DNA from: Polymyxa betae A26-41
Taxonomy: Eukaryota > Protista > Endomyxa: Phytomyxea
Assembly: GCA_003693705.1 (NCBI GenBank)
Contig: RBZT01000156.1
Coordinates: 1-64,000, forward strand
Direction of reading: 5' to 3'
Length of the DNA stretch: 64,000 nucleotides
In this document: positions 1 to 24,587 of the stretch, piece by piece
How positions within the stretch are numbered: position 1 is the first letter of the stretch
Layout of the letters: every line of letters begins with the position of its first letter
The notes under the pieces: generated by a model
Database searches by the model: none
What the model saw: only the letters and a program-made list of their open reading frames with translations
Told to the model about the DNA's origin: nothing
Translations under genes and position numbers: made by a program

Positions 1-1893
1 GATTAGAAAAGCTGAAAGAGAACCTTGCTTACGTCGAACAGCAGATGACCAGCAGCGGTGCTTATACTGCAGAGAAACGCGCAAAGGCTATGTTGCGAGT
101 CCTCGGTTTTGACGAAACTGGTGAACAAGCTCCCGTCAGCTCATTATCTGGTGGTCTTCGTATGCGTGTCGCTTTGGCTTGCGCCTTTATCATTGATCCG
201 GATGTCTTACTACTTGATGAACCAACAAACCACCTGTAAGAATTCTGATTCATTGCTAGAACCTTTATTTAAACTTCGATACAGGGATATGCCCTCAGTC
301 CTATGGCTCGAGCAGCGTCTTCGTGCTTATAAGGGATCCTATCTTCTGGTCACCCACGATCGTACTCTCTTAGAGAACGTCGTTACCTCCGTTATGCTCA
401 TTCAGGACATGACTTTACACTACTTCAACTGTGGCTTCAAAGATTTCGAAAAGCAAAAAGAGAAGCTAGATTCCGAACGAGCCAAGCGAATTGATACGTT
501 CTTGCAAAGAAACCGAAACCTCGGACCTGACGATCCTCAATATCGTACCAAGATGGAATACCAGACGTGGATTCAACGACGATACGAGCGTCAAATGATG
601 CTTGCTGGAAAGTTCACATTCAAGGCACCTGAGCCACTTCCTTGTGGTCCTGGCCAGGAACAAGCGGATGTCTCTCTGATCAAGGTCGACAACGTTAGAT
701 TCAGCTATGATCCTGCTAAGGGATTGCCGTTTATCTTCGACACTCCAGTCAGTTATGAGATCAAGGTCGGCACCCGAGTCGGTATTATGGGTCCCAACGG
801 TGCTGGTAAATCCACCTTCCTGAAGCTGATCACTGGCAAGCTCGAACCAACCGAGGGAAAGATCATTTGCAATCCCAAATTCACTTTGGCGTACTTCGGT
901 CAGCACTCAACAAAGGAACTTGAGCTGGAAATGACTCCGATTGAGTTCATGTGCCACTCGTTCCCTGATGTCAATCCTGGTGAACTGAAAAGCCATTTGA
1001 AAAAAACCTCAATCTCTGACGATCCGATGAACACGCGCATGAAGAACTTATCGTTTTCTCAACGATCTTGTGTTATATTCGCCAAGTTGACATATGTTCC
1101 ACCCCACCTGTTAATTATGGACGAACCGACCAACTTCTTAGATCTGGATTCTGTTGATTCTTTGATTACCGCTGTCAACAAATTCTCTGGTGGTTTGATC
1201 GTGGTTACACACAACCGAGATTTCCTGAAGCGCTGCAGCAAGCACTTCTTGTCGATCGTCCCAGGAGCGTTCTTAGAATTCCAGACTATGAAACAAGCCG
1301 AACGTGCCACATATTCGTTTATCAATGCGCTGGAGGAAGGCCAAGTCATTGATGCAAAGAATGCCATTCTCCAAAACCGAGGTGGTGGTGCCATCCACAC
1401 CGAGGAATACCTCGCTGAGCAGGCGGCACGTTTGACTGAACAGCAGAGGCTGGCGAAGGAGAAGGAAGATGCTATCGCTGCTGAACAAGCTCGCTTAGCC
1501 GCTATCGCTGCTGAAAAAGAGGCTCGACGTCAGGCTAAGATCGCAGCTCAGAAGACCGACTGGGTTGCTGGAGAAGCCTGTTGGGCCCCTGTTGGTGGTA
1601 AGCATGTCCCTGCTACTGTCGTTCGAAACATCCCGAGCATGGGTGTCACTGTTCAGCTGGAATCTGGCAAGACACTCATGGTTGAAGCCAAAAAGCTGAA
1701 ACTTGAGAATCCCGACACCGGTTCTGAGAAGAAAGAGTCTAAACCGCAAAACCAAGCTCAAGGTCAATCAGGAAGTAACAGAGGTGGACGCGGTGGTGCC
1801 CGTGGTGGATCTTCTGGCGCTCGAGGAGGTCCCCAAGGCTCGCGTGGCATGAGAGGTGGTCCCCGAGGAGGACGGGGCGGCGGCCGAAATTGA
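1..1893 (+). CDS. ABC-F family ATPase, paralog A (5'-truncated by the window edge), with C-terminal Tudor/SH3-like barrel and RGG tail
   Basis: Exon 1..235 ([22 protein letters not shown]), intron 236..284 (GTAAG..ATACAG, 49 nt), exon 285..1893 ([36 protein letters not shown]). Two NBDs and no TM segments, as in ABC-F. Confidence 0.92.
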
Positions 1894-2500
1894 ACTGCAA
1901 ATAAACCCAATTGTATTGTACTTTGATGCATTCTTTTCCCGATGAGGGACTACCCCTGAAACTTGGAATTCGCTTTAACAGGGATTACTCCACAGGCTGT
2001 TTGCAAGAAATTTTGGCTTGTTATCGATAGGATAGCGTGGCAATCTGTTGTTCCGTACTTGGCCAAACTGAGTGGCTTTACCTATTTCGGGCTAGTAATT
2101 TGTACTATTCGAAGTAAGGGTCCGGTTAACCAATGTCGCTTCGTTTCCATATTCAACGAGGGGATTACGAAATCCGATCCAAGATCGCAATCTGGATGGA
2201 AAATTCAGGATATTGCAATCTGGAACTCGTTTCAAAGCGTAGAAAGCCAGCTGCTCTGCTAAATTCTTCATTCAGGCTCATCACAGGCTGACCTGCCTGA
2301 CCGGCAGCATCGGAAAACGTCCATCAGGAATTATACCAGCCAAAAATCGGCCCTAGAAAGTCCGCCACGGTGTTTCAAGATGCAGAACTCTATATGAGAG
2401 GCATTGTCGTATAAAAACTCTGCGCGAGCCGGAGTCCGCACCACGGCTGTTTCCCGACCTGGGCTCCACCATCACACCATTCTGAATTGCTGCATCAACC

Positions 2501-4051
2501 ATGGCGAATTCCTTTTGGCCGGTTGAGCCCCATGAAAACAAGAAGGTCATCCCCATGATTGCCATGAGCTTTCTAATCTGCTTCAACTACACGTTGTTGC
2601 GTGATCTGAAGGATATTCTGGTAGGTTATGTTAAGCTTTAGCGAATGGGTTGCTGAAGCTCTCCCTGTTTGTAGGTCTTGGAAGCCATGAACGCCACTGC
2701 TATTTCCGGATTGAAGCTCTACTGTACTTTGCCCATGTCCGTCGTCGTCATGTTGGTCTACACCAAGCTCAGTCTGAAGTACACCAAAGCCCAGGTCTTC
2801 TACCAGTTCATGTGTATGTTCCTTGCCTTCTTCGCCATTTTCCTGTTCGTCCTTCTCCCATTCCAACCCTACATTGAGATGGGTGCCGCCTGGGGTAAAG
2901 AGATGGAGCCGGTAATGGGAGGTTTCTCCACGTTTACTTCCCTCTTTGCCAACTGGACTACCGCTGCAATGTATGTCTTCTCTGAGCTATGGGGCACCGT
3001 CGTTCTGTCCCTTCTCTTCTGGGGATTTGCAAACGACATTTGCCGTACGTCCGAAGCTAAACGATTCTACACTCTCTTCAACCTGGGCGCCAACTTCTCC
3101 TTGCTGTTTTGTGGTGGTTTCCTGATGGGCATGTCGTTCTTTTTACCCAAAGAAAAGGTGAAGCTGAAGCCAGGAGAAACGCCAAACAACACCATGCTTT
3201 ACTTCATCATTGCCGTGGTTCTCGTCTTCACTGTCCTCATCATGTTCATCTACCGCTGGATGCAAAAGAACGTCTTGACTGATGCCCGCCTGTGCCCTCC
3301 TAAGGAAGATGGTCCTAAGAAGAAGAAGGTCAAGCTTGGGTTCTTTGAGTCTCTCAAGGTTCTTGTCATGAACCCTTACATTCTGCTTATCGCCATTATG
3401 GTTCTCATGTACGGTGTCTCTGTCAACTTGGTGGAATTGTACTTCAAAGACACATGGGCAATTGTTTACTCGAACCAAGCTGACAAGACTTGGTTCCAGG
3501 GATGTTTCTCTATGGGTACTGGTATCTCTTCCTTGTTCCTTCTCACTTTCATCGGTGGTAAGTCTATCCGTGTTTTGGGATGGACCAAGACTGCTCTGAT
3601 TACTCCCGTCGTCCTGATCTGCTCTGGTCTGCCCTTCATGATGATGTACGCTGTCAAGAAGCACATGGTGGATGCCATTTCTTTCCCGGTCTTGGTCGCC
3701 ATCGGCTACGTCGCTGTCGTCGGCTCCAAGTCCTGCAAGTACTCGTTCTTCGACCCCACCAAGGAAATGGCCTACATTCCTCTCGGGGAAGATCGTGGCC
3801 GTGCCAAGGCTGCCGTCGACATTGTCGGTGCTCGTGGTGGTAAATCTCTCGGAAGTGTCGTCGTTCAGATTTTCAACATGGCGTTCTCGACCGCCGATGC
3901 CAAAACCTATGTCGAAACTATCGCGTCCATCCTCATCACTGGTGTTCTAACCTGGACTGCCGGTACCATTGCTCTGGGCAAGAAGTACAACGCCAAGGTT
4001 AAGGAGCAGAACGCTGCTGTTGAACTTGGCGGTACCGTTGCCAAGGCCTAA
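2501..4051 (+). CDS. TLC/NTT-family ATP/ADP (nucleotide) translocase, ~498 aa, no targeting presequence
   Basis: Exon 1 2501..2620 (MANSFWPVEPHENKKVIPM..FNYTLLRDLKDIL), intron 2621..2674, exon 2 2675..4051. NTT signature motifs SELWG, FWGFANDI, EAKRFY, NLVE, KYSFFDPTKEMAYIPL, KAAVDIVGARGGKS. Multiple hydrophobic helices. Confidence 0.93.
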
Positions 4052-4984
4052 ATCCCTTTTCCCAATTGATTCATCCAGCTGTAATTTCGTTCTATAAATT
4101 TCTAGAATCCATTGTTTTATCATGTCATCGATTGCCTTTAGTGAGTAGTACCAGACTCCAGTAAAATGCCCTTTCGCAGACTATGTTTTTCTCTAACTAC
4201 GGTACATTGATTTACACTGAAAAGCCCAGCTTTCCGTTCCCAGATATTATACTAACATCAGTTCCAATTATGCTAATCGATTGCTGATTACAGGTCAGGA
4301 TTACAACCATCTTTAACCAGTTATTAAAACGGGATGTTTCTGCTGATATTCCACATGCAATGTTTTGACGGTCAGATTTCTAAGACAAAGAAAAACGCTT
4401 CGCATTCATGCCTCAATGTATTTGTACAATGATTCCGGGCCTGCCAGCATTGTCTCCATTGTCAGATCTACTGAACCTGCCTTACTAAGAAGACTTGGAC
4501 TGGATTGAGTTCGACTAGTTCGCTGAGTTGATCAATAGGCGCCTTTGCCTTTTCTTAAAAGCAGAGCCTCCACAGCCAGTGCTTCTTCTTCCGATTCCCG
4601 GAGGTGGTCATCGTTTCACCCGTCGTCGCTGAAGGTTAATCAACGTACCCTAGTTTCACCAGCTGCACCGCCTCGATGGAAATAACTAACTACCGACCCG
4701 GTCTGCTCAGGTAACCGTGAAGATCTGTCATCTTGACCAACGTTTCGAATGCACACCGACGGAAGGCTTTTGGCTGATGATGTCCAAGAAACTGGGCTCT
4801 GGCGGTCTTTGCGACATCAATCTGCTGAATACTCCACATAGAAGCTTCGAAGAGTTGCTGAAGCCTACCGTTTGAACAGCTGATTTTGTTCTCTTTGCTG
4901 AATGATGTGTAACGATTATATCCTGTGGTAGGACGACCCTCCTCTTTGCACGGACAAATGTTTTAATGATTTTAATGTCGCGTT

Positions 4985-7900
4985 ATGGTCCAGATAAATG
5001 ACGCCAGCTGGATCACATCGCCATCGCTGGCTGTCTATCTACCCAATACCATCCTCGACTTCGGTGAGGTAATCGATTCGAGCTCGCCCGCCCTCGTCCG
5101 GCTTCGTATCAGGTCGTTGCTGGCCTATCCGTCCCAGCTGTGTCTGGTTCGTCAGCCGACTTCTCAACTCAACCTTTCGGTTCAAGAGTACAACCCAAAC
5201 ATCGATCTAGAACCATTATACCGCATCAACACATTCAATGTTGTCGAGGTTGTCTCACAGGGTCCATTTATCCACCTGCAAGCTCAAGAAGACCGCGAGA
5301 TTATCGTCTCACTATATCCTGGAGGTTTTACCGGCCGAGGCACAGGTCTGCAACGGTTCAATGCACTTCCATTTCGATCGACGCTCCGTCTATCTTTAGA
5401 CGGTCACGTCATCGAAATTGGGATTTGTGCAAGGATATGCCGATCCCAGGTAGTTTTTGGCACTCGCGAGCTGCTCGTTGATTGTGCTGCTGGCAACACC
5501 GATGTTAAAACGATCTCGGTCCATAACCTTTCAGAGTTTGCCACTTTTTTTTCTATATCCATTCTCAATGGCAATGACCATAGCTTTGCTTTCACCGAGT
5601 TTGGGAGCGGTATTCCGCTTCAAGCCTTGCACCCTATCGCTGGCTTCTCCGAAATTGTAATTCAAGTGTCTTTATGCCCAGACAACGACGTCGTTGTAGA
5701 AAGCTCCAGCATGATGCTGTTAGAGAATGTATTAGACAGCCGCAATACTGATCGCATCCCAATTTATCTTGCTATCACCTCGGAAACTCGTGAAGATGGT
5801 CTGCAGCTATCCAGCTCTGTGGTCGATTTTGGTGATTGCCTTGCCGGGGAAGTCACTGGCAAAACATTCGTTCTACGAAACACCACACAGGCGCCGATCG
5901 AGGTATTCCTTTCATCGAATGGTGCCAAACCAGATAGAATATGGTTCATCCTGGAGGATAGTCTCACCATAAGCTCATGTACAAGCACTGTAATGGGTAC
6001 TCCCAGCGCCACGAGCGAAGATGAGAATGACGATTTCAATATTCCTTTAGGCGGCAGCGCCACTAGCCTTCAATGCTCGCGAGCCCCTTCGTTCTCTCGT
6101 TTGCCAGGATTTAATCGAGATGTTCGAATCCATTTCCGGAAACCCTCTAGCTCTGTTGCTGCTACAGAGAAAGACACCAATCCGCTCAAGAATACTGTCG
6201 AAGAATTAACGATTTTGCCCGGAAAAGAACGGCAGATGAGAATTCTATTCCTTAGCCCAATCAAGTATAATGTACCATTGTCCACAAAAGATGTTTCTCT
6301 GGATTCAGCGCCTCTGAACGCGAATGATGCATTCTCGGCTGATAGAGTCCAGCTATCTCCATTTAATGCTCGCGTATTCCTGAATTATTATCGATCTGGG
6401 CCGGCCCAGTCTTCTACTCATGTCAGATATTTAAAGAGTATTCAATGCATTGGCCGAATTTGCACGTCGCTGGTTCGTGTCCATCCACTTGTTGTGGATT
6501 TTGGGGAAATCCCTCTTATGGTTCCAGCTTCCAAAACTTTCACTATTGAGAATTTGTCTGATATGCCGACTTCCGTCTTTATGGAGTTTGAATCCAAAGT
6601 TTTAACAGTCAGCAAGAACCCAGTCGATCTCGCAGCCCGTTCTAAAGCGGAAGTCAGGCTGAAGCTTGTGCCCCAGAAACGCGCAGCTTTGTATCAGAAG
6701 GAGATTCAGCTGTCTAATCTGCGAAATCCACACGATAACCACTCGTTGATGGTACTTTCTCAAAATACGGACCGGCTCAAATTCCATTCTCATTTATGTT
6801 TCTATGATGTCAATTTTGTCGATGGCCCCACTAATAACGAATTGATCAAAGTCGATTTTGGAAAAGTTGTTACGAACTGTCCTCATACTCGCGTCTTTAC
6901 TATCAGAAATAATAGCGCTGGCATTATAACAATTCAGTTCTTATCAGCCTCTACCGAAGATGTTGCAGTATACCATCAAGCTGCGAGCAATCCGGATGGC
7001 AACCACAAGGAAGAGGTTCAACTTTCCTCTTTAGTGTCGCATGAACATCCAGACACTTCACCCTGGTTTCCGGACGCCGATGAGCAGAGAGAATCTGTCG
7101 AGAAAGAAATCGAAAGGCTCAAATATTTCCAAAAATGCGTCAAAGATGGTCTTTTGAATAGCATCGACCAAGTGGAAATTGCAGTCGAAGAGACAGTTTC
7201 TCTTCTCTTAGTTTACTGCTTGAAATCCGACGTACATCCATACCTTCATGGAAAGCTAAAAAATCTGCCTGCCAAATTAAATCTGCGCCTTGCCTCTGCT
7301 CATGGCTTTAGTGGAGCTGAAGTTGCTAGCGTCCCTGATTGCATTGTTAACATTCAAGCTATGGTCTGCCGAACGTCATTTCATTTCGCATTGAAGCATA
7401 TCAATTTCGGTAATGTGAGTGTGATAGGACATCGAACGGTTGCTGATTGCTTTGTAGGTATTCTCAATAATTTGGCTCGACGCCACTTTAATCTTATTAT
7501 CAGTAACATGAGCGATATCTCAGTTCAGTATTCGATCATCAAAACTCGCTCCATCGCGTCAGACGATCTTGATTGCCCATTAGGCTATACTGGTATTCTC
7601 CGTCCATATCAAATTAAGGAAATCCCGATTATCTTCAAGCCTTGCCTTGCTGGGCGATTTCTGGAGACGCTGACTTTTCAAAATGTGCAAGATCCCAATG
7701 ACAAACAGGTTTAGCTGCCCCTCGTTTCCTTCGATTTCATGCTAACTGTCTGATCAGGTTATTTGTGTCAAAGCTGATATCAAGAAGCCATACAATTTCT
7801 GGGTGCAGACTGTCGTTCTTGATTTTGGATATTGTCTTCTTGGAGAAAGGTCACGAAGAAAGCGGCTGCTAATAAAAAATATTAGCGAAAGAACCAGGAA

Positions 7901-11000: not shown

Positions 11001-13421
11001 TTAAGCACGTCCACCACGTCCGCCTCTCATGCCTCCTCGCATGCCACCACGGCCGGCCTGAGGACCACCGCGAGCGCCACCACGAGCTCCAGAAGGGCCA
11101 CCTCGGGCACCACCACGTCCGCCTCTGGCGGCACTTGGCTGACCCTGGTTCTGTGGCTTGGTGCTCTCCTTCTTCTCGCCGGTAGCGTCAGGGTTTTCAA
11201 CCTTCAGCTTCTTGGCTTCAACCATGACGGTCTTGCCAGATTCAAGTTGGACAGTGACACCCATGCTTGGGATGTTACGAACAACAGTAGCAGGGACGTG
11301 CTTGCCACCAACAGGAGCCCAGCAGGATTCACCAGCAACCCAGTCGGTCTTCTGAGCAGCTAACTTGGCCAGACGACGAGCCTCCTTCTCAGCAGCGATG
11401 GCGGCGATACGAGCTTGCTCAGCAACAACAGCGTCTTCCTTCTCCTTGGCCAATCTCTGCTGTTCGGCCAAACGAGCAGCCTGTTCAGCAAGGTATTCCT
11501 CGGTGTGGATAGCACCACCACCTCGGTTCTGCAGAATGGCGTTCTTGTGGTCGATGACTTGTCCTTCTTCCAAAGCAGTAATGAAGGAGTAAGTAGCACG
11601 TTCGGCCTGCTTCATTGTGTCGAACTCCAAGAAAGCACCTGGGACGATCGACAAGAAGTGCTTGCTGCATCGCTTCAGGAAATCTCGGTTGTGGGTAACC
11701 ACAATCAGACCACCGGAGAACTTGTTGACAGCGGTAATCAACGAATCGACGGAATCCAGATCCAAGAAGTTCGTCGGTTCATCCATGATGAGCAAGTGAG
11801 GCGGAACGAAAGTCAGTTTGGCGAAGATGACACAGGATCGCTGAGAGAACGATAGACCAGCCATACGGGTGTTCATGGGGTCATCCGAGATCGCGGTCTT
11901 GCGAAGATGAGCCTTCAATTCACCAGGGTTGACATCAGGGAATGAGTGGCACATGAACTCGATGGGAGTCATATCCAGCTGCAATTCCTTGGTCGAGTGC
12001 TGACCGAAGTAGGCGAGGGTGAAGTTGGGGTTAGTGATGATCTGACCCTCGGTGGGCGTCAGCTTGCCGGTGATCAGCTTCAAGAAGGTGGATTTACCAG
12101 CACCGTTGGGTCCCATGATACCGACACGGGTGCCGATCTTGACATCGTAGCTGATGGGAGTGTCGAAGATGTATGGCAGGCCCTTCTCGGCATCGTACGT
12201 GAAGCGGACGTTGTCGACTTTAAGAAGAGAGACGTCGGATTGCTCCTGTCCTGCAGCGCATGGCAGAGGCTCAGGGGCCTTGAACGTGAATTTGCCCGAA
12301 AGCATCATTTGACGTTCGTAGCGTTTACGAACCCACTGCTGGTACTCCATCTTGGTTCGGTACTGAGGGTCTTCTGGCGCAAGGTTACGGTTCCTGTTCA
12401 AGAAGGTGTCGATACGCTTAGCACGTTCCTGGTCGTTCTTCTCCTTCTGCTTTTCGAAGTCTTTGAATCCACACGAGTAGTATTCAAGACCCATATCCTG
12501 GATAAGCATGACGGACGTGACGACGTTCTCCAACAGAGTACGATCGTGGGTAACCAGCAAGTACGAGCCCTTGTAGGCACGCAGACGCTGCTCGAGCCAC
12601 AGAACGGAAGGCATATCCCTAGAATTCGATCAGATGCGTGTTGGCTGACGAGTACGAGACACTAACAAGTGGTTGGTGGGTTCATCAAGAAGCAATACAT
12701 CAGGATCAATAATGAAAGCACAGGCCAATGCAACACGCATACGGAGACCTCCTGACAGGGAGCTCAGCGGAGCCTGCTCACCAGTCTCATCAAAACCAAG
12801 GACACGCAACATAGCCTTAGCACGCTTCTCAGCAGTGTAAGCACCGCTGGAGGTCATTTGCTGATCGATGTAAGCCAAATTGTCCTTGAGCTTGGTCAGA
12901 CGGTCGGCATCCTCCTCGGTCTCGATCTGGCTCTTGAGGATCTTGTCAATGACAGTGAGGATCCGGTGGTAGGGGTGAGAGCAGAGGACGGTGTCGATAA
13001 CGCTGATGGCGTCGGCGACTTCGTGGTGTTCCAACTCCTTCATGTGATGAACGTGGAGATGGACGGGGAAGTCGCGGAGCTCGCGGGACGAGATGGCGTT
13101 GAACAAAGACGTCTTTCCACTGCCGTTGATACCGAACAGAGCGCATCGCTTGTTGGGTTCAATTTCCAAACGAGCGTTCTTGAACAGATCGGCGGAGTTG
13201 TCAGGCGTACGAAGGCTGAAGACCGGGATGTCGACGACCTTGGTGAGCTTGATCTTCTTAGCGGCGGCTGCCAGCTGCTCCCGCTTGTAGACGGGGAATA
13301 GCATCTCGATCTGCTCCTTCTCGGCGTAGTCGATAGGCGGAAGCTGCTCGGGGGTCAAGTACCCATAGGTGTTCTCGAATTCCCGGTTGAAGGTTTTGGG
13401 ATTGAAGGTAGGACGAGACAT
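11001..13421 (-). CDS. ABC-F family ATPase, paralog B (complete), with C-terminal Tudor/SH3-like barrel and RGG tail
   Basis: Exon 13421..12667 ([23 protein letters not shown]), intron 12666..12619 (GTTAGT..TTCTAG, 48 nt, same position as in paralog A), exon 12618..11001. Protein is co-linear and highly similar to paralog A. Confidence 0.93.
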
Positions 13422-14438
13422 GATGCTAGTTTTGAAAGCGTGAATGCTATTGGGAGACTAAAAAGACAGGAAGTCAGCAATACGAAGCGACATGGACGAC
13501 GGCCATCTGGCCATAAGCTCTTACCTGGCCTCGGGTCGAGTCTTGCTTGTTCAGAATCGGCACCGAAAACCAGAGTGAGGGCTGTTGTGGTCGGAATCTG
13601 CCCAAACCCCGTCACGGATTGCGCTCCGGAGTTAATGGCTCACATTTGCGCTGCTGTTTGCCGGAACTTAGCCCCGGCTGGCCGGGCCGGCCTGGTGGCT
13701 GAGCCCTGCCAAGTGTCACACTGGGCCTGGCAAATTTGGCCAGTGGAGTCACGTTCTGAATGAGTGTAATCGGAAGTCGGAAGTATCTAAGGTGATTTTG
13801 TGGTGGTTCCGATGCAGGCGAGACTCAAGCCATCTTCAGCAACAAATAACTTCGGTTTCAGGGGGTACAGAACTCCACTGAACTAACCAACATTCTTTAT
13901 TGCCTGTAACTATAATTCTGTACGCTTTTTGTATCCACTCGATTACTATTTGGAACAGGCTTGAAGCCTGGGATTGAAATAAACCATAATGATAATGTCT
14001 TGAAGCAATTTTATGGCTCTCCCGTGTAAATTTAGCTAACTACACCGCCCCCAAATCAAACGTTGTTTAAAACTATTCACGGCCTCTACTCTGCGCTCGC
14101 CTGACGGTAATATCTTTACACCCATGCTTTCATGGTTGCCTGAGTTTCAGATTAAACAAGTCGTTAGGCCCCATTGCCAGCCAAGACGCTGGCTCGGCAG
14201 AGGGAAGCGTCCATCGGCACGACTTCTGTTGCATCAAGCTCGTATACAATACCAGATCTCGTTTAGTCATTCTTCTGCCAAACAATGCGTAGTATGCATG
14301 TATACACTACAGAAGTGGGAACAGAAGTTGTTTTCGAGGTCCGTGACGAATCTGTCTTAGCACATCATTGGGTTCATTTCTTACAGGGGCGTCATTCTCT
14401 GCCGCCCATTTTCCATTCTGTCATTGCTCTGCTGACTA

Positions 14439-14918
14439 ATGTTGGCCGCGATGTATTGGCTCCCGATCACGCTGCCGTCCATGTTCGTGTTCCTGGTCGT
14501 GGTTACGATCGGTGTCGCCATGATTTTCAAAGTTTCATCACACAAAACTGCCGAGGTTTTCGCCATGGAACAAGCGAAAGCTGATGCAGTGCCATTGTCG
14601 CCCGCGCGCTTGACGTCGTCTGATAAAGAGAATCCTGAGTCCACGTCGTTTCTCGAACCTTCCCAAGTGACACCAAAGAATTTTGAAAATATCATGATCG
14701 AGGAGGAAGCGTTTTTAAGGCGGCTGGGCTGGTCCCCTTCAAGCTCACAGTTCATTGAACCGCTGACCGATGATGAAAGGCTTCAGTGGGAATTGAAACA
14801 TCTGAATCTACCCAAGCTTCTTGCTGCCAGACGCCAGCAACGAGTTACACATTTCTCATTCCGTAATGAACAAGTGGACGAACCCGTCTCCACTTCTTTA
14901 CCTACTAAAATAATCTAG
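14439..14918 (+). CDS. Hypothetical membrane protein with a vasculin/GPBP1-like C-terminal motif; may extend upstream to 14124 (see findings)
   Basis: 159-aa ORF with an N-terminal hydrophobic segment and EEEAFLRRLGW..PLTDDE, which resembles from memory the conserved vasculin-family motif. Confidence 0.45.
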   Translation: MLAAMYWLPITLPSMFVFLVVVTIGVAMIFKVSSHKTAEVFAMEQAKADAVPLSPARLTSSDKENPESTSFLEPSQVTPKNFENIMIEEEAFLRRLGWSPSSSQFIEPLTDDERLQWELKHLNLPKLLAARRQQRVTHFSFRNEQVDEPVSTSLPTKII

Positions 14919-17283: not shown

Positions 17284-18912
17284 ATGGTCACTTTGCAAAG
17301 CTCATTTTCTGATTCATTTAACAAACCCACCAAACGGCAGAAGACGTCGTCTGACGATCAGGACGGCTTCATCAGCGCTCATCATCCGAACAATGTTCAG
17401 CCGTTGGGAAACAGTTTCGCGGATCCGCTGGGGCAAACGCGACGGCGTCTAGGTGCAGGCCAGCTAGGGTGCCTTAGCGATGATATTTTAGTAGACGTTA
17501 TGAAATGCCTATCGCCTCGAGATTTGTGTCGCTTATCAAACGTGTCCCCTTTCTTGTATATTCTCACTAATCATGATGATCTCTGGAAGACTGTCACATT
17601 GCGTGATCGGGAATCCCTCCCAAGATTTCATGTTAACTGGAAGCAAACATACTTGACGATCTCTGGAATCGACGTTCTTTTGAAGCCACTTCAGTTTGCA
17701 AGTATCTATTCAGATTTCCTATTTCAGCCTTGGTTTGCATGTTGGTAACTTATTTCGAAGTAAATGTAATTGCTCTATAGGTTGAATTCAACAAAGGAAA
17801 TACCGCCTAGATGGCTATCAAGAAGCACTATTGATAGAAGGTCAGCTAACGATCTGACTGTTGAGGCGTTCATCGAAGAATACGAAAAGCCCAGAATTCC
17901 TGTCATTATCACGGACCTCGTTAATTGCTGGCCAGCCTTTGGGAAATGGACTCCAGAATATCTCTCTGACATCTTTCAGGACATTCCCGTCAATGTTCAG
18001 GTTGTTGACATGACTTTGAACGCCTTCTGGAGGTAAGACGGACACAAGGTTGCCAATGAAACTAACTGTTTGGGTTTAGTTATGCGAATCAGACCAAAGA
18101 TGAAACTCCCTTATATCTTTTCGAAAAGGAATTCGTCAACAAGATGCCATCTTTGGAATCTGATTTTGAAGTTCCCAAATATTTTAGAGATGATCTGTTT
18201 CAGTTGCTATCAGCAGCTCGGCCAGATTTCCGATGGATTGTTGCAGGTCCTGGAAGGTGTGTTTTTTGAGTGAAGTTCATAATCCGTTTTGAAGCTTGGG
18301 TTGGTCAGATCGGGGTCGACATTTCATCAAGATCCCAACGCGACATCGGCATGGAATGCAGTTCTCACAGGATCGAAGAAATGGATTCTGTTTCCAAAGC
18401 ATATTTGCCCTCCTGGCGTTATTCCTTCAGAAGATGGAGCTGGTCGGTAATCAGAATGGCTGATAGTAATTAGACTAACTGTCTCGTATACAGAGGTGAT
18501 GACACCACTTTCATTGATTGAGTGGTTTTCATCTTACTATTCCGAAGCTGAAAAATTAAATCCGTATGAAGGGATCGTGGAAGCTGGCGAGCTAATGTTC
18601 ATTCCTTCCGGGATGTGGCATTGCGTGCTCAATCTAGACTCATCCATTGCGGTTACCCAGAACTTTGTTTCGTCCCAGAATCTTCTCGATGTGTTGAACT
18701 TTGCCAAGAAGTCTCCTGATCTTGTTTCTGGGTACAAGGGTGATGTTTCGTTAGCAGATATGCTAAGAGATCTCGTCAACAAACATTATCCTAGTCTGAT
18801 AGCAGATCTGGAGAAACAACAGTTAAATGAGCCTCAGTCTGTTTGGTCTGTTTGCACACAAGACGTCGATGGCTCTGAGAAATTTTGCTTCGGATTTGCA
18901 AGTGAAGACTAG
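17284..18912 (+). CDS. F-box + JmjC protein (JMJD6 / plant JMJ22-like hydroxylase-demethylase)
   Basis: F-box-like [83 protein letters not shown] (HxD), MWHCVLN (distal His). Four short introns. Confidence 0.88.
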
Positions 18913-23887: not shown

Positions 23888-24587
23888 TTAATTAGTCGGC
23901 GGTCTACTGTTCGCCAAGATTCCTTCGTCGTCAAACCCTTTCAGAATGGTGTTGATTTCTAGGTGGACGGTCCCAGTTGAAACCGTCTTCTGACGCCAAC
24001 GTTTCTGTGCGCTCATGACGACGTTGGCTTCAGTGTATTGAGGATATCCTCCGACAAATCGAGCTCGGATGTCATCCATTATGGATCCTTGTGGACGAAA
24101 TCCAGGCAGTTCTAGCATGTGTCGGCCTGCAGCAGCCGGAAGATAAGCAAACGCATACCCAGCTGATGTCATATTAATCAGATCTGTTGGGTCACGATTG
24201 GCGTTTTACCGAAATCTACTCGCGATTCCGAATCATGGAAATATATCTCAACTAATATTCTCGGCCAGCCTTGAACGCCGGAACATGAAAACGATACATC
24301 AATTGCATGATTCCAGACGACTACATTTTGATTCTATAAAAGCAATCACATTCTGATTCGATGGGTCTAGATGCTGCATTTACTGGATTCGGCTCTGAAC
24401 TGAACGTTTGACCCTGTATGGATCCTTCTGCTACATGCCAGTGCTCCTTGCCGAAGTCTATCCTGAATTTGGCGAACAATGGACGATTGTTAAACCCGCT
24501 TGCACCGATCAATGTCCCAACCATGTAAACTGCCAAACAAATCTATAAATTTCGCCACGAATTGCAGACACATTGACCTTGCGGCAT
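23888..24587 (-). CDS. B9D2: B9 domain protein 2 (ciliary transition zone, MKS module)
   Basis: MPQ|VYMVGTLIGASGF..LFAKF, GQT, WNHAIDVSFSCSGVQGWPRI, AGYAFAYLP, RARFVGGYPQ, STGTVHLEIN. Confidence 0.85.

What the first reader, a model, noticed from the sequence alone, without database searches (positions are those of the whole stretch)
2501..4051. Intron-containing NTT (TLC ATP/ADP translocase) with no transit peptide: candidate host-ATP import system in a flagellated eukaryote
Seen: a complete NTT whose ATG (2501) runs straight into the conserved FWP..KK.IPM..FNYTLLRD.KD core, so there is no plastid or other presequence. It carries a normal 54-nt spliceosomal intron and sits among eukaryotic genes, so it is a nuclear gene and not bacterial contamination. 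The charged residues known to matter in NTTs are all present (K in RDxKD, E in ELWG, E in NLVE, K in GKS). Codon usage is visibly C/G-ending like the neighbouring ABC-F, which suggests high expression. Established: presequence-free NTTs are the energy-parasitism transporters of Chlamydiae, Rickettsiales, microsporidia and Rozella, whereas plant and algal NTTs are plastid-targeted. Inference: this organism has cilia, peroxisomes and abundant introns, so it is not a microsporidian. It may have acquired an NTT by lateral transfer and use it at the plasma membrane to take up host ATP or other nucleotides.
Basis: partly seen in the sequence, partly recalled or inferred. Interest (0 to 1): 0.85.

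Follow-up and report, generated by a model that had tools for sequence, protein, structure and literature searches.

The report
Plasmodiophorid nucleotide transporter (NTT) gene
This is a real, expressed, intron-containing nuclear gene for a bacterial-type ATP/nucleotide transporter in what is almost certainly the beet-root parasite Polymyxa betae; it probably lets the parasite take ATP from its host cell, but the same gene family was already reported in the related clubroot parasite in 2017.

Summary
Window 2501-4051 (+) carries a two-exon gene (2501-2620 and 2675-4051, with a 54-nt GT..AG intron) for a TLC/NTT nucleotide transporter (Pfam PF03219, E 2e-110).

- **Expression and 5' end:** Spliced transcript contigs from three separate studies use exactly this junction. 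They start about 22 nt before the ATG and contain an in-frame TGA upstream, so there is no upstream exon and no presequence.
- **Organism:** The genome (1001 contigs, 27.09 Mb) matches the published unannotated draft of Polymyxa betae, an obligate intracellular plasmodiophorid with flagellated zoospores.
- **Relatives:** The nearest proteins are the NTTs of Plasmodiophora brassicae (52%) and Spongospora (49%), followed by Chlamydiae (about 41%). The locus shares neighbouring genes with one P. brassicae NTT locus.
- **Phylogeny:** Plasmodiophorid NTTs form one clade (100/100) next to Rozella (97/99). An independent chlamydial origin is not rejected (AU p 0.15).
- **Copy number and structure:** There is one copy here and two in P. 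brassicae, whose copies have no intron.
- **Metabolic context:** The genome scan finds none of four de novo purine synthesis families. It does find an ENT nucleoside transporter, IMPDH, adenylosuccinate synthase, ATP synthase gamma and many mitochondrial carriers.

The most likely function is ATP/ADP exchange with the host cytosol at the parasite's plasma membrane. This is inferred, not tested. Major et al. (2017) described NTTs in P. brassicae, so this is a new member of a known kind. Interest is moderate.

The parts
2479..2500 (+). Minimal 5' UTR. It contains an in-frame TGA at 2483-2485, and the start codon sits in an ACCATGG context.
   Evidence: The X7 transcript contig lies wholly on 2479-2619 plus 2674-4110.
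2501..2620 (+). Exon 1, 40 codons. It holds a short cytosolic N-terminus, TM1 and the RDLKD motif.
   Evidence: Pfam TLC E 9e-12, profile 13-50. It aligns to residues 15-51 of solved NTT 9j3n. One hydrophobic segment at residues 15-33.
2621..2674 (+). Spliceosomal intron, 54 nt, GT..AG, phase 0, with three in-frame stops.
   Evidence: A joint that skips 54 nt is seen in contigs of X3, X7 and X12. Sequence. Both P. brassicae homologues lack any intron.
2675..4051 (+). Exon 2, 458 codons plus TAA. It holds the rest of the TLC/NTT domain (TM2-TM12).
   Evidence: Pfam TLC E 2e-110. PDB 9j3n E 4.7e-82 over residues 6-450. 52% identical to the P. brassicae NTT.
4052..4110 (+). Minimal 3' UTR.
   Evidence: The X7 contig ends at 4110. 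The X3 and X12 contigs end at 4078.
17296..18891 (+). JmjC/Cupin_8 gene. Its homologue lies directly beside the P. brassicae NTT P0001, so the neighbourhood is shared but the orientation is inverted.
   Evidence: tblastn of L003 ORFs against the window, E down to 7e-68. Gene table of L003.
23900..24534 (-). B9-C2 (ciliary transition-zone) gene. Its homologue is also a neighbour of the P. brassicae NTT P0001.
   Evidence: tblastn E 3e-33. Gene table of L003.

Best explanation
The stretch is the single nuclear gene for a nucleotide transport protein (NTT, TLC family, TC 2.A.12) of a plasmodiophorid, almost certainly Polymyxa betae. The gene descends from a bacterial, Chlamydia-like NTT that was already present in the common ancestor of Polymyxa, Plasmodiophora and Spongospora. 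Since then it has become an ordinary eukaryotic gene: it has gained a 54-nt intron, a Kozak-type start and C-rich third codon positions. The protein has no cleavable targeting sequence. Its first transmembrane helix starts about 15 residues after the start methionine and most likely serves as a signal anchor, sending the 12-helix protein through the secretory pathway to the parasite's plasma membrane. While the plasmodium grows inside a root cell, the protein most likely exchanges host cytosolic ATP for parasite ADP (plus phosphate). This is energy parasitism, as shown experimentally for Rozella, microsporidian and chlamydial NTT1-type proteins. What is shown here: gene structure, expression, splicing, the 5' end, family membership, copy number, ancestry within plasmodiophorids, and the genome's lack of de novo purine genes. 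What is inferred: membrane location, substrate, exchange mode and life-cycle stage.
For: - Family: Pfam TLC E 2e-110 for exon 2 and 9e-12 for exon 1. Solved NTT 9j3n matches at E 4.7e-82 and the plastid AtNTT1 structure 9j3j at 1.8e-66.
- Conserved charged motif residues. Their importance for transport is taken from PMC4256464.
- Spliced transcripts in three studies, with no upstream exon. In-frame TGA at 2483.
- The same short N-terminus occurs in P0001, P0002 and P0003.
- Only one NTT locus in the genome.
- Organism: 1001 contigs and 27,085,814 b, against 1,001 contigs and 27,085,946 bp for P. betae. That paper describes P. betae as an obligate root endoparasite.
- Gene neighbourhood shared with the P. 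brassicae P0001 locus.
- Tree: plasmodiophorid clade 100/100, joined to Rozella at 97/99.
- Rozella RaNTT1 transports ATP, and the reconstructed Rozella/Microsporidia ancestor is an ATP/ADP exchanger (PMC5923384). Microsporidian NTTs sit in the parasite plasma membrane (PMC4256464).
- Genome context: four de novo purine families are absent, while positive controls are found exon by exon.
Against: - No transport assay or localisation exists for any plasmodiophorid NTT.
- Substrate range cannot be read from NTT sequence (stated in PMC4256464).
- The organism keeps ATP synthase gamma and about 90 mitochondrial-carrier repeats. It can therefore make its own ATP, and the transporter need not be essential for energy.
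- A pure exchanger would not relieve purine auxotrophy. An ENT nucleoside transporter is also present.
- Free-living cercozoans also mostly lack de novo purine genes, so that loss is not specific to parasitism.
- NCBIfam TIGR00769 scores 345.8 bits for exon 2 alone, below its curated cut-off of 387.2.
- Transcript depth comes from assembled contigs and cannot give expression level or life-cycle stage.
Confidence: 0.7

Rival explanations
1. Same gene and same plasma-membrane location, but it works as a net importer (proton-coupled, or with a broader substrate range such as GTP or other NTPs). Its main role would be to supply purine nucleotides to a purine-auxotrophic parasite rather than to exchange ATP for ADP.
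For: Four de novo purine families gave no match in the genome, while IMPDH and adenylosuccinate synthase are present. There is only one NTT gene, so it may need to serve both energy and building-block supply. Net importers evolved repeatedly within NTTs (PMC5923384 abstract).
Against: The reconstructed Rozella/Microsporidia ancestor, which lies next to this clade in the tree, is a narrow-range ATP/ADP exchanger insensitive to CCCP. An ENT nucleoside transporter could cover purine salvage. Free-living rhizarians also lack the pathway.
Confidence: 0.2
2. The transporter sits in an internal membrane (mitochondrion, ER/Golgi or another compartment) and moves nucleotides within the parasite cell, as reported for one Encephalitozoon cuniculi NTT in mitosomes and for plastid NTTs.
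For: Location cannot be predicted with certainty for polytopic proteins. Some ThNTT3 and ThNTT4 label was found on internal membranes (PMC4256464).
Against: There is no N-terminal extension at all: about 14 residues, containing acidic residues, precede TM1. The genome has a large mitochondrial-carrier family that normally provides the mitochondrial ADP/ATP carrier. As far as I know plasmodiophorids have no plastid (my own knowledge). The gene is closer to the chlamydial solved NTT than to the plastid one.
Confidence: 0.08
3. The gene is bacterial (chlamydial) contamination or an assembly chimera in a metagenome-binned draft.
For: The published assembly was binned from root-derived metagenomic contigs. 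The next-best hits after plasmodiophorids are Chlamydiae.
Against: The intron is spliced in transcripts from three studies. Eukaryote-type genes flank it on one 64-kb contig. Neighbouring genes are shared with a chromosome-level P. brassicae assembly. Identity to any bacterial protein is only 41%.
Confidence: 0.01

Closest known systems
Plasmodiophora brassicae NTTs (two genes; Major, Embley and Williams 2017, PMC5381601) and the Spongospora subterranea homologue
   Same: Same family. They share the short presequence-free N-terminus (M + 2-3 residues, then WPVE..ENKK). They form one well-supported clade with the window's protein (100/100). The P0001 locus shares the JmjC, B9-C2 and one further neighbour gene with the window. 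All are obligate intracellular plant parasites.
   Different: Only 52%, 48% and 49% identical. The P. brassicae genes have no intron, while this one has a 54-nt intron. P. brassicae has two copies that are 72% identical to each other, while this genome has one. The Plasmodiophora and Spongospora proteins carry an insert of about 23 residues in the loop after TM2 that this protein lacks.
Rozella allomycis RaNTT1 and microsporidian NTTs (Heinz et al. 2014, PMC4256464; Dean et al. 2018, PMC5923384)
   Same: A bacterial-derived NTT in a eukaryotic intracellular parasite. They are neighbours in the tree (97/99 with Rozella). The conserved charged residues are present. The predicted use is the same: taking host ATP across the parasite plasma membrane.
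   Different: About 40% identity. The host organism is a rhizarian, not a fungal relative. It keeps ATP synthase and many mitochondrial carriers, unlike Microsporidia. There is a single copy rather than a family of up to four. Common origin with this clade is not proven: the alternative of an independent chlamydial origin has p-AU 0.151.
Chlamydial NTT1/Npt1 ATP/ADP translocase (solved structure 9j3n)
   Same: Aligns end to end (exon 2 residues 6-450, E 4.7e-82; exon 1 to chain residues 15-51) with the same motifs.
   Different: About 41% identity. The window's gene is eukaryotic, with an intron, and its N-terminus is about 11 residues shorter.
Plastid NTT1 of Arabidopsis (solved structure 9j3j)
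   Same: Same TLC family and fold (E 1.8e-66).
   Different: The plastid protein carries a transit peptide. This protein has none, and its sequence matches the chlamydial structure better than the plastid one.

Membership tests
NTT / TLC nucleotide transporter family (Pfam PF03219, TC 2.A.12) | Sequence matches the family profile above the curated threshold over its full length | tested here: met
   PF03219 scores 370.4 bits for exon 2 (cut-off 21; profile 58-491 of 491) and 45 bits for exon 1 (profile 13-50). NCBIfam TIGR00769 scores 345.8 bits for exon 2 alone, below its stricter cut-off of 387.2.
NTT / TLC nucleotide transporter family (Pfam PF03219, TC 2.A.12) | Twelve transmembrane helices with an MFS-like fold | tested here: met
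   Uninterrupted alignment to solved NTT structure 9j3n. A hydropathy scan gives one hydrophobic segment in exon 1 and ten to eleven in exon 2. No structure was predicted here.
NTT / TLC nucleotide transporter family (Pfam PF03219, TC 2.A.12) | The four charged residues needed for transport in AtNTT1 (K155, E245, E385, K527; cited in PMC4256464) | tested here: met
   K in RDLKD, E104 in ELWG, E254 in NLVE and K390 in GKS are all present. The three exon-2 residues are invariant in alignment A1, and the exon-1 lysine aligns with both solved NTTs. Equivalence to the Arabidopsis numbers rests on motif context, not on a numbered alignment.
NTT / TLC nucleotide transporter family (Pfam PF03219, TC 2.A.12) | Transports nucleotides (ATP/ADP exchange or net NTP import) | not testable with these tools
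   This needs radiolabelled uptake in E. coli or liposomes.
Presequence-free NTTs of eukaryotic intracellular parasites (Microsporidia / Rozella / Plasmodiophora clade) | No N-terminal organelle-targeting extension on the mature transcript | tested here: met
   Transcript contigs start at 2479-2505 with no further exon, and an in-frame TGA lies at 2483. About 14 residues precede TM1.
Presequence-free NTTs of eukaryotic intracellular parasites (Microsporidia / Rozella / Plasmodiophora clade) | Groups phylogenetically with the parasite clade rather than with plastid or free bacterial NTTs | tested here: inconclusive
   The window's protein groups with P. brassicae and Spongospora at 100/100, and with Rozella at 97/99. 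Holding plasmodiophorids with a chlamydial clade instead is not rejected (p-AU 0.151). Both are long branches. No modern microsporidian, plastid or rickettsial sequence could be included.
Presequence-free NTTs of eukaryotic intracellular parasites (Microsporidia / Rozella / Plasmodiophora clade) | Located in the parasite plasma membrane at the host interface | not testable with these tools
   This needs immunolocalisation in infected roots.
Plastid NTT (plant and algal type) | N-terminal transit or bipartite targeting peptide, in an organism with a plastid | tested here: not met
   No extension is present. The nearest relatives are plasmodiophorid and chlamydial, not plastid.

The most novel reading that the evidence does not exclude
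The single Polymyxa NTT, the plasmodiophorid NTTs in general and the Rozella/microsporidian NTTs all descend from one bacterial-to-eukaryote acquisition that later passed between unrelated eukaryotic endoparasites. In Polymyxa, which lacks de novo purine synthesis and has only this one NTT, the protein would be an indispensable gateway for host ATP and purine nucleotides, and hence a specific weak point of the rhizomania vector.
Probability: 0.3. Interest if true: 0.55.

Novelty: new member of a known kind. Interest (0 to 1): 0.33.

Why it matters
Polymyxa betae transmits beet necrotic yellow vein virus (rhizomania) and cannot be cultured, so its physiology is known almost only from sequence. 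Its draft genome was published without annotation, and this NTT was absent from the protein collections searched: the best hit was a 52% relative.

The new result extends the 2017 report for Plasmodiophora brassicae. It shows that Polymyxa, like Plasmodiophora and Spongospora, carries an expressed, presequence-free NTT in a partly conserved gene neighbourhood. That dates the acquisition to before these genera diverged and points to energy parasitism as a general plasmodiophorid trait. It also gives a clean example of a bacterial-derived gene gaining an intron in one lineage only.

The gene is a well-defined candidate for a simple transport assay and for localisation in infected roots. Conceptually it adds a member to a known class and does not open a new one.

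Tried and rejected
- **Joined protein:** The two exons were never joined. Following the operators' rule, all searches, alignments and trees used exon 2 (458 of 498 codons) by reference, and exon 1 separately. No analysis of the joined protein was made.
- **62-row tree:** A careful IQ-TREE run on 62 rows did not finish in 864 s. I replaced it with a 29-row careful tree. The quick 62-row tree gave the same topology.
- **Raw RNA reads:** Run X23 gave no reads on the stretch, so there is no read-level evidence for the exact transcript start, the strand or the expression level.
- **Outgroups:** The three protein searches returned only one Rozella sequence and one synthetic ancestral sequence. They returned no modern microsporidian, plastid or rickettsial NTT, so the tree has no outgroup.
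- **Second P. brassicae locus:** The P0003 locus (neighbours XPG and dynein heavy chain) shares no neighbour with the window.
- **Literature:** Searches found no paper on a Polymyxa NTT, none on purine auxotrophy in Plasmodiophora (the word 'purine' does not occur in either genome paper), and not the paper for structures 9j3n and 9j3j.
- **Earlier findings:** A search by words returned nothing.
- **Contamination and plastid-type readings:** Both were considered and rejected (see rival explanations).
- **Structure prediction:** Not run, because the sequence match to a solved NTT already covers the whole protein.

Full report
**1. What is in the sequence**

On the + strand an ATG at 2501 opens 40 codons that end at 2620. 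A 54-nt GT..AG intron follows (2621-2674; read through, it has three stops). A 458-codon frame then runs from 2675 to a TAA at 4049-4051.

Pfam TLC (PF03219) matches exon 2 at E 2e-110 over profile positions 58-491 of 491. It matches exon 1 at E 9e-12 over positions 13-50. Together the two exons cover the family model without loss at the junction.

The solved chlamydial-type NTT 9j3n aligns to exon 1 (chain residues 15-51) and to exon 2 (chain 59-508, E 4.7e-82). The solved plastid AtNTT1 (9j3j) matches less well, at E 1.8e-66.

Every search, alignment and tree used exon 2 by reference, and exon 1 separately.

**2. The gene is real, nuclear and expressed, and it has no upstream coding exon**

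I laid the contigs of three runs, from three studies carrying three organism labels other than that of the DNA source, on 1400-5000. Each gave one contig that skips exactly the 54 nt (GT..AG) and otherwise matches at 99% or better.

- One contig of 1578 nt lies entirely on 2479-2619 plus 2674-4110. The assembled transcript therefore has about 22 nt of 5' UTR, about 59 nt of 3' UTR and nothing else.
- An in-frame TGA lies at 2483-2485 inside that 5' UTR, and the ATG sits in an ACCATGG context.
- These runs hold 0.61-0.65 of the sampled words of 1900-4400. That is the share expected if they contain only the mRNA (1578 of 2501 nt). The two runs marked as the possible DNA source hold 1.00.
- A raw-read metatranscriptome (X23) gave no reads, so it is no test.

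The flanking genes are eukaryotic in type. There is an ABC ATPase ORF at 49-1890 (+), a second at 11004-13457 (-), and a protein at 4985-7711 with weak, sub-threshold matches to ASH/HYDIN-like Ig domains.

**3. The organism**

The window's genome has 1001 contigs and 27,085,814 bases. The only draft of Polymyxa betae is described as 1,001 contigs and 27,085,946 bp with 45.1% GC, unannotated and binned from root material (PMC6328671). The window has 44.3% GC.

The best protein hits are Plasmodiophora brassicae (52% and 48%) and Spongospora subterranea (49%). Hundreds of chlamydial NTTs follow at about 41%. I therefore take the organism to be P. betae. That paper describes it as an obligate root endoparasite; that its zoospores are flagellated is my own knowledge. 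The identification rests on assembly statistics and nearest relatives, not on a marker-gene comparison.

**4. Relation to known NTTs**

Major et al. (2017) reported the first rhizarian NTTs: two genes in P. brassicae that grouped with the Microsporidia/Rozella clade (PMC5381601).

*N-terminus and loop.* In alignment A1 all plasmodiophorid proteins begin M + 2-3 residues and then the conserved WPVE..ENKK. None has an extension, and they are about 10 residues shorter at the N-terminus than the chlamydial proteins. The Plasmodiophora and Spongospora proteins carry an insert of about 23 residues after TM2 that the window's protein lacks.

*Tree.* I built a careful IQ-TREE tree (LG+C20+F+G4 by PMSF) of 29 rows: exon 2, four plasmodiophorid proteins, Rozella, the synthetic AncNTT_RozMic, and 11 rows from each of two chlamydial clades.
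- The plasmodiophorid clade has 100/100 support.
- It joins Rozella at 97/99.
- Together with the reconstructed ancestor it separates from all chlamydial rows at 98/99.
- The quick 62-row tree agrees.
- The place of the window's protein inside the plasmodiophorid clade is unresolved.
- An AU test does not reject the alternative in which plasmodiophorids sit with one chlamydial clade (19 log-likelihood units worse, p 0.151).
- Both the Rozella branch and the plasmodiophorid stem are long.

A shared origin with the fungal endoparasites is thus favoured but not established. No modern microsporidian, plastid or rickettsial sequence could be retrieved with the capped searches.

**5. Vertical inheritance and gene history**

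Both P. brassicae genes are intronless: their gene spans of 1563 and 1572 nt equal the coding length.

In the chromosome-level assembly, the P0001 locus is followed by a JmjC gene, a B9-C2 gene and a 193-residue gene. Their homologues lie in the window at 17296-18891, 23900-24534 and 14697-14834, two of them inverted. The second P. brassicae locus shares no neighbour with the window.

The two P. brassicae proteins are 72% identical to each other and about 50% identical to the window's protein. That suggests a duplication within the Plasmodiophora lineage.

The window's genome has only this one locus, both by family profile and with P0003 as query.

The simplest history is this: an NTT was present in the common plasmodiophorid ancestor, it was inherited vertically, it duplicated in Plasmodiophora, and it gained an intron in the Polymyxa lineage.

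**6. Function**

The four charged residues shown to matter in the Arabidopsis transporter (K155, E245, E385, K527; cited in PMC4256464) correspond by motif to K in RDLKD, E104, E254 and K390. All four are present here, and the three exon-2 residues are invariant in A1.

Experimental work on the neighbouring clade shows three things:
- Rozella RaNTT1 transports ATP.
- The reconstructed Rozella/Microsporidia ancestor is a narrow-range ATP/ADP exchanger insensitive to CCCP (PMC5923384).
- Microsporidian NTTs lie in the parasite plasma membrane (PMC4256464).

By analogy, the most likely mechanism is ATP/ADP exchange across the plasmodial plasma membrane while the parasite lies in the host cytoplasm. 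The first helix would act as a signal anchor. Substrate range cannot be read from NTT sequence, so this step is inference.

**7. Metabolic context**

Scans of the whole genome found no match for four de novo purine families: AICARFT/IMPCHase, SAICAR synthase, GARS_A and AIRC. The control genomes matched in 12-14 of 14 cases.

Scans did find, exon by exon:
- OMP decarboxylase, adenylosuccinate synthase and IMPDH;
- one ENT nucleoside transporter;
- ATP synthase gamma;
- 92 mitochondrial-carrier stretches.

The organism therefore appears to be a purine auxotroph that still respires. This makes nucleotide uptake important, but two points weaken any direct link to the NTT. An exchanger gives no net purine gain, so the ENT or a net-import mode would be needed for that. 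And free-living cercozoans also mostly lack the pathway (bioRxiv 10.1101/2025.10.20.683504), so the loss need not be tied to parasitism. The assembly is about 91% complete by CEGMA, so absence is probable, not proven.

**8. Codon usage**

GC3 of the NTT is 0.66-0.70, against 0.40-0.52 for most long ORFs in the window. The adjacent ABC ORF has 0.51 and the second ABC copy has 0.62-0.68. The bias is towards C (189 of 458 third positions). That fits codon adaptation of a well-expressed gene, but it does not prove it. Contig depths cannot rank expression.

**9. Verdict**

The kind of system is known: presequence-free NTTs in eukaryotic endoparasites, including the sister genus (2017). This is therefore a new member of a known kind.

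The useful additions are:
- first evidence for Polymyxa;
- transcript-level proof of the short N-terminus;
- lineage-specific intron gain;
- single copy number;
- a conserved gene neighbourhood;
- the purine-pathway context.

No plasmodiophorid NTT has been assayed or localised in any paper I could find.

Noticed in passing
whole genome G000 (not in the window): Four Pfam families of de novo purine synthesis (PF01808, PF01259, PF01071, PF00731) have no match anywhere in the 27-Mb assembly. OMP decarboxylase, adenylosuccinate synthase, IMPDH, one ENT nucleoside transporter and ATP synthase gamma are present. This suggests purine auxotrophy with salvage intact. The word 'purine' does not occur in either P. 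brassicae genome paper I searched.
   Followed up: partly
window 3431 (exon 2 residue 253): The transcript contig of run X12 differs from the window at three coding positions. Two changes are synonymous (2953, 3463). One turns V253 into M inside the conserved NLVE motif, next to the essential glutamate. V253 is invariant in the eight-sequence alignment. This is a single contig at depth about 12.
   Followed up: partly
window 49-1890 (+) and 11004-13457 (-): Two ABC-ATPase (ABC_tran) genes in opposite orientation bracket the NTT and the large Ig-repeat gene. Their third-position GC differs (0.51 against 0.62-0.68).
   Followed up: partly
alignment A1 columns about 156-185; exon 2 residues about 70-85: The Plasmodiophora and Spongospora NTTs carry an insert of about 23 residues in the loop after TM2. 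It is missing both in the window's protein and in chlamydial NTTs. This is either an insertion after Polymyxa branched off or a loss in Polymyxa.
   Followed up: no
L004/L005 10001-11572 (P. brassicae P0003): NCBI's name for this second P. brassicae NTT carries the tag '(mitochondrion)'. The gene lies on a nuclear-size contig (up to 1.27 Mb) between an XPG nuclease gene and a dynein heavy-chain gene, so the tag looks like a record artefact and not a localisation.
   Followed up: partly
P0004 (UniParc UPI0006B2B900, 551 aa): This unnamed protein groups with the Spongospora NTT (100/97) at 58% identity. It is probably a second paralogue in Spongospora or a close relative. Its first 35 or so residues look like translated 5' UTR.
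   Followed up: no
window 2145-2305: A short, very low-depth contig (161 nt, depth 2) from run X3 lies in the intergenic region upstream of the NTT, on its own and not joined to the NTT transcript. It may be an unspliced or antisense trace, or DNA carry-over.
   Followed up: no
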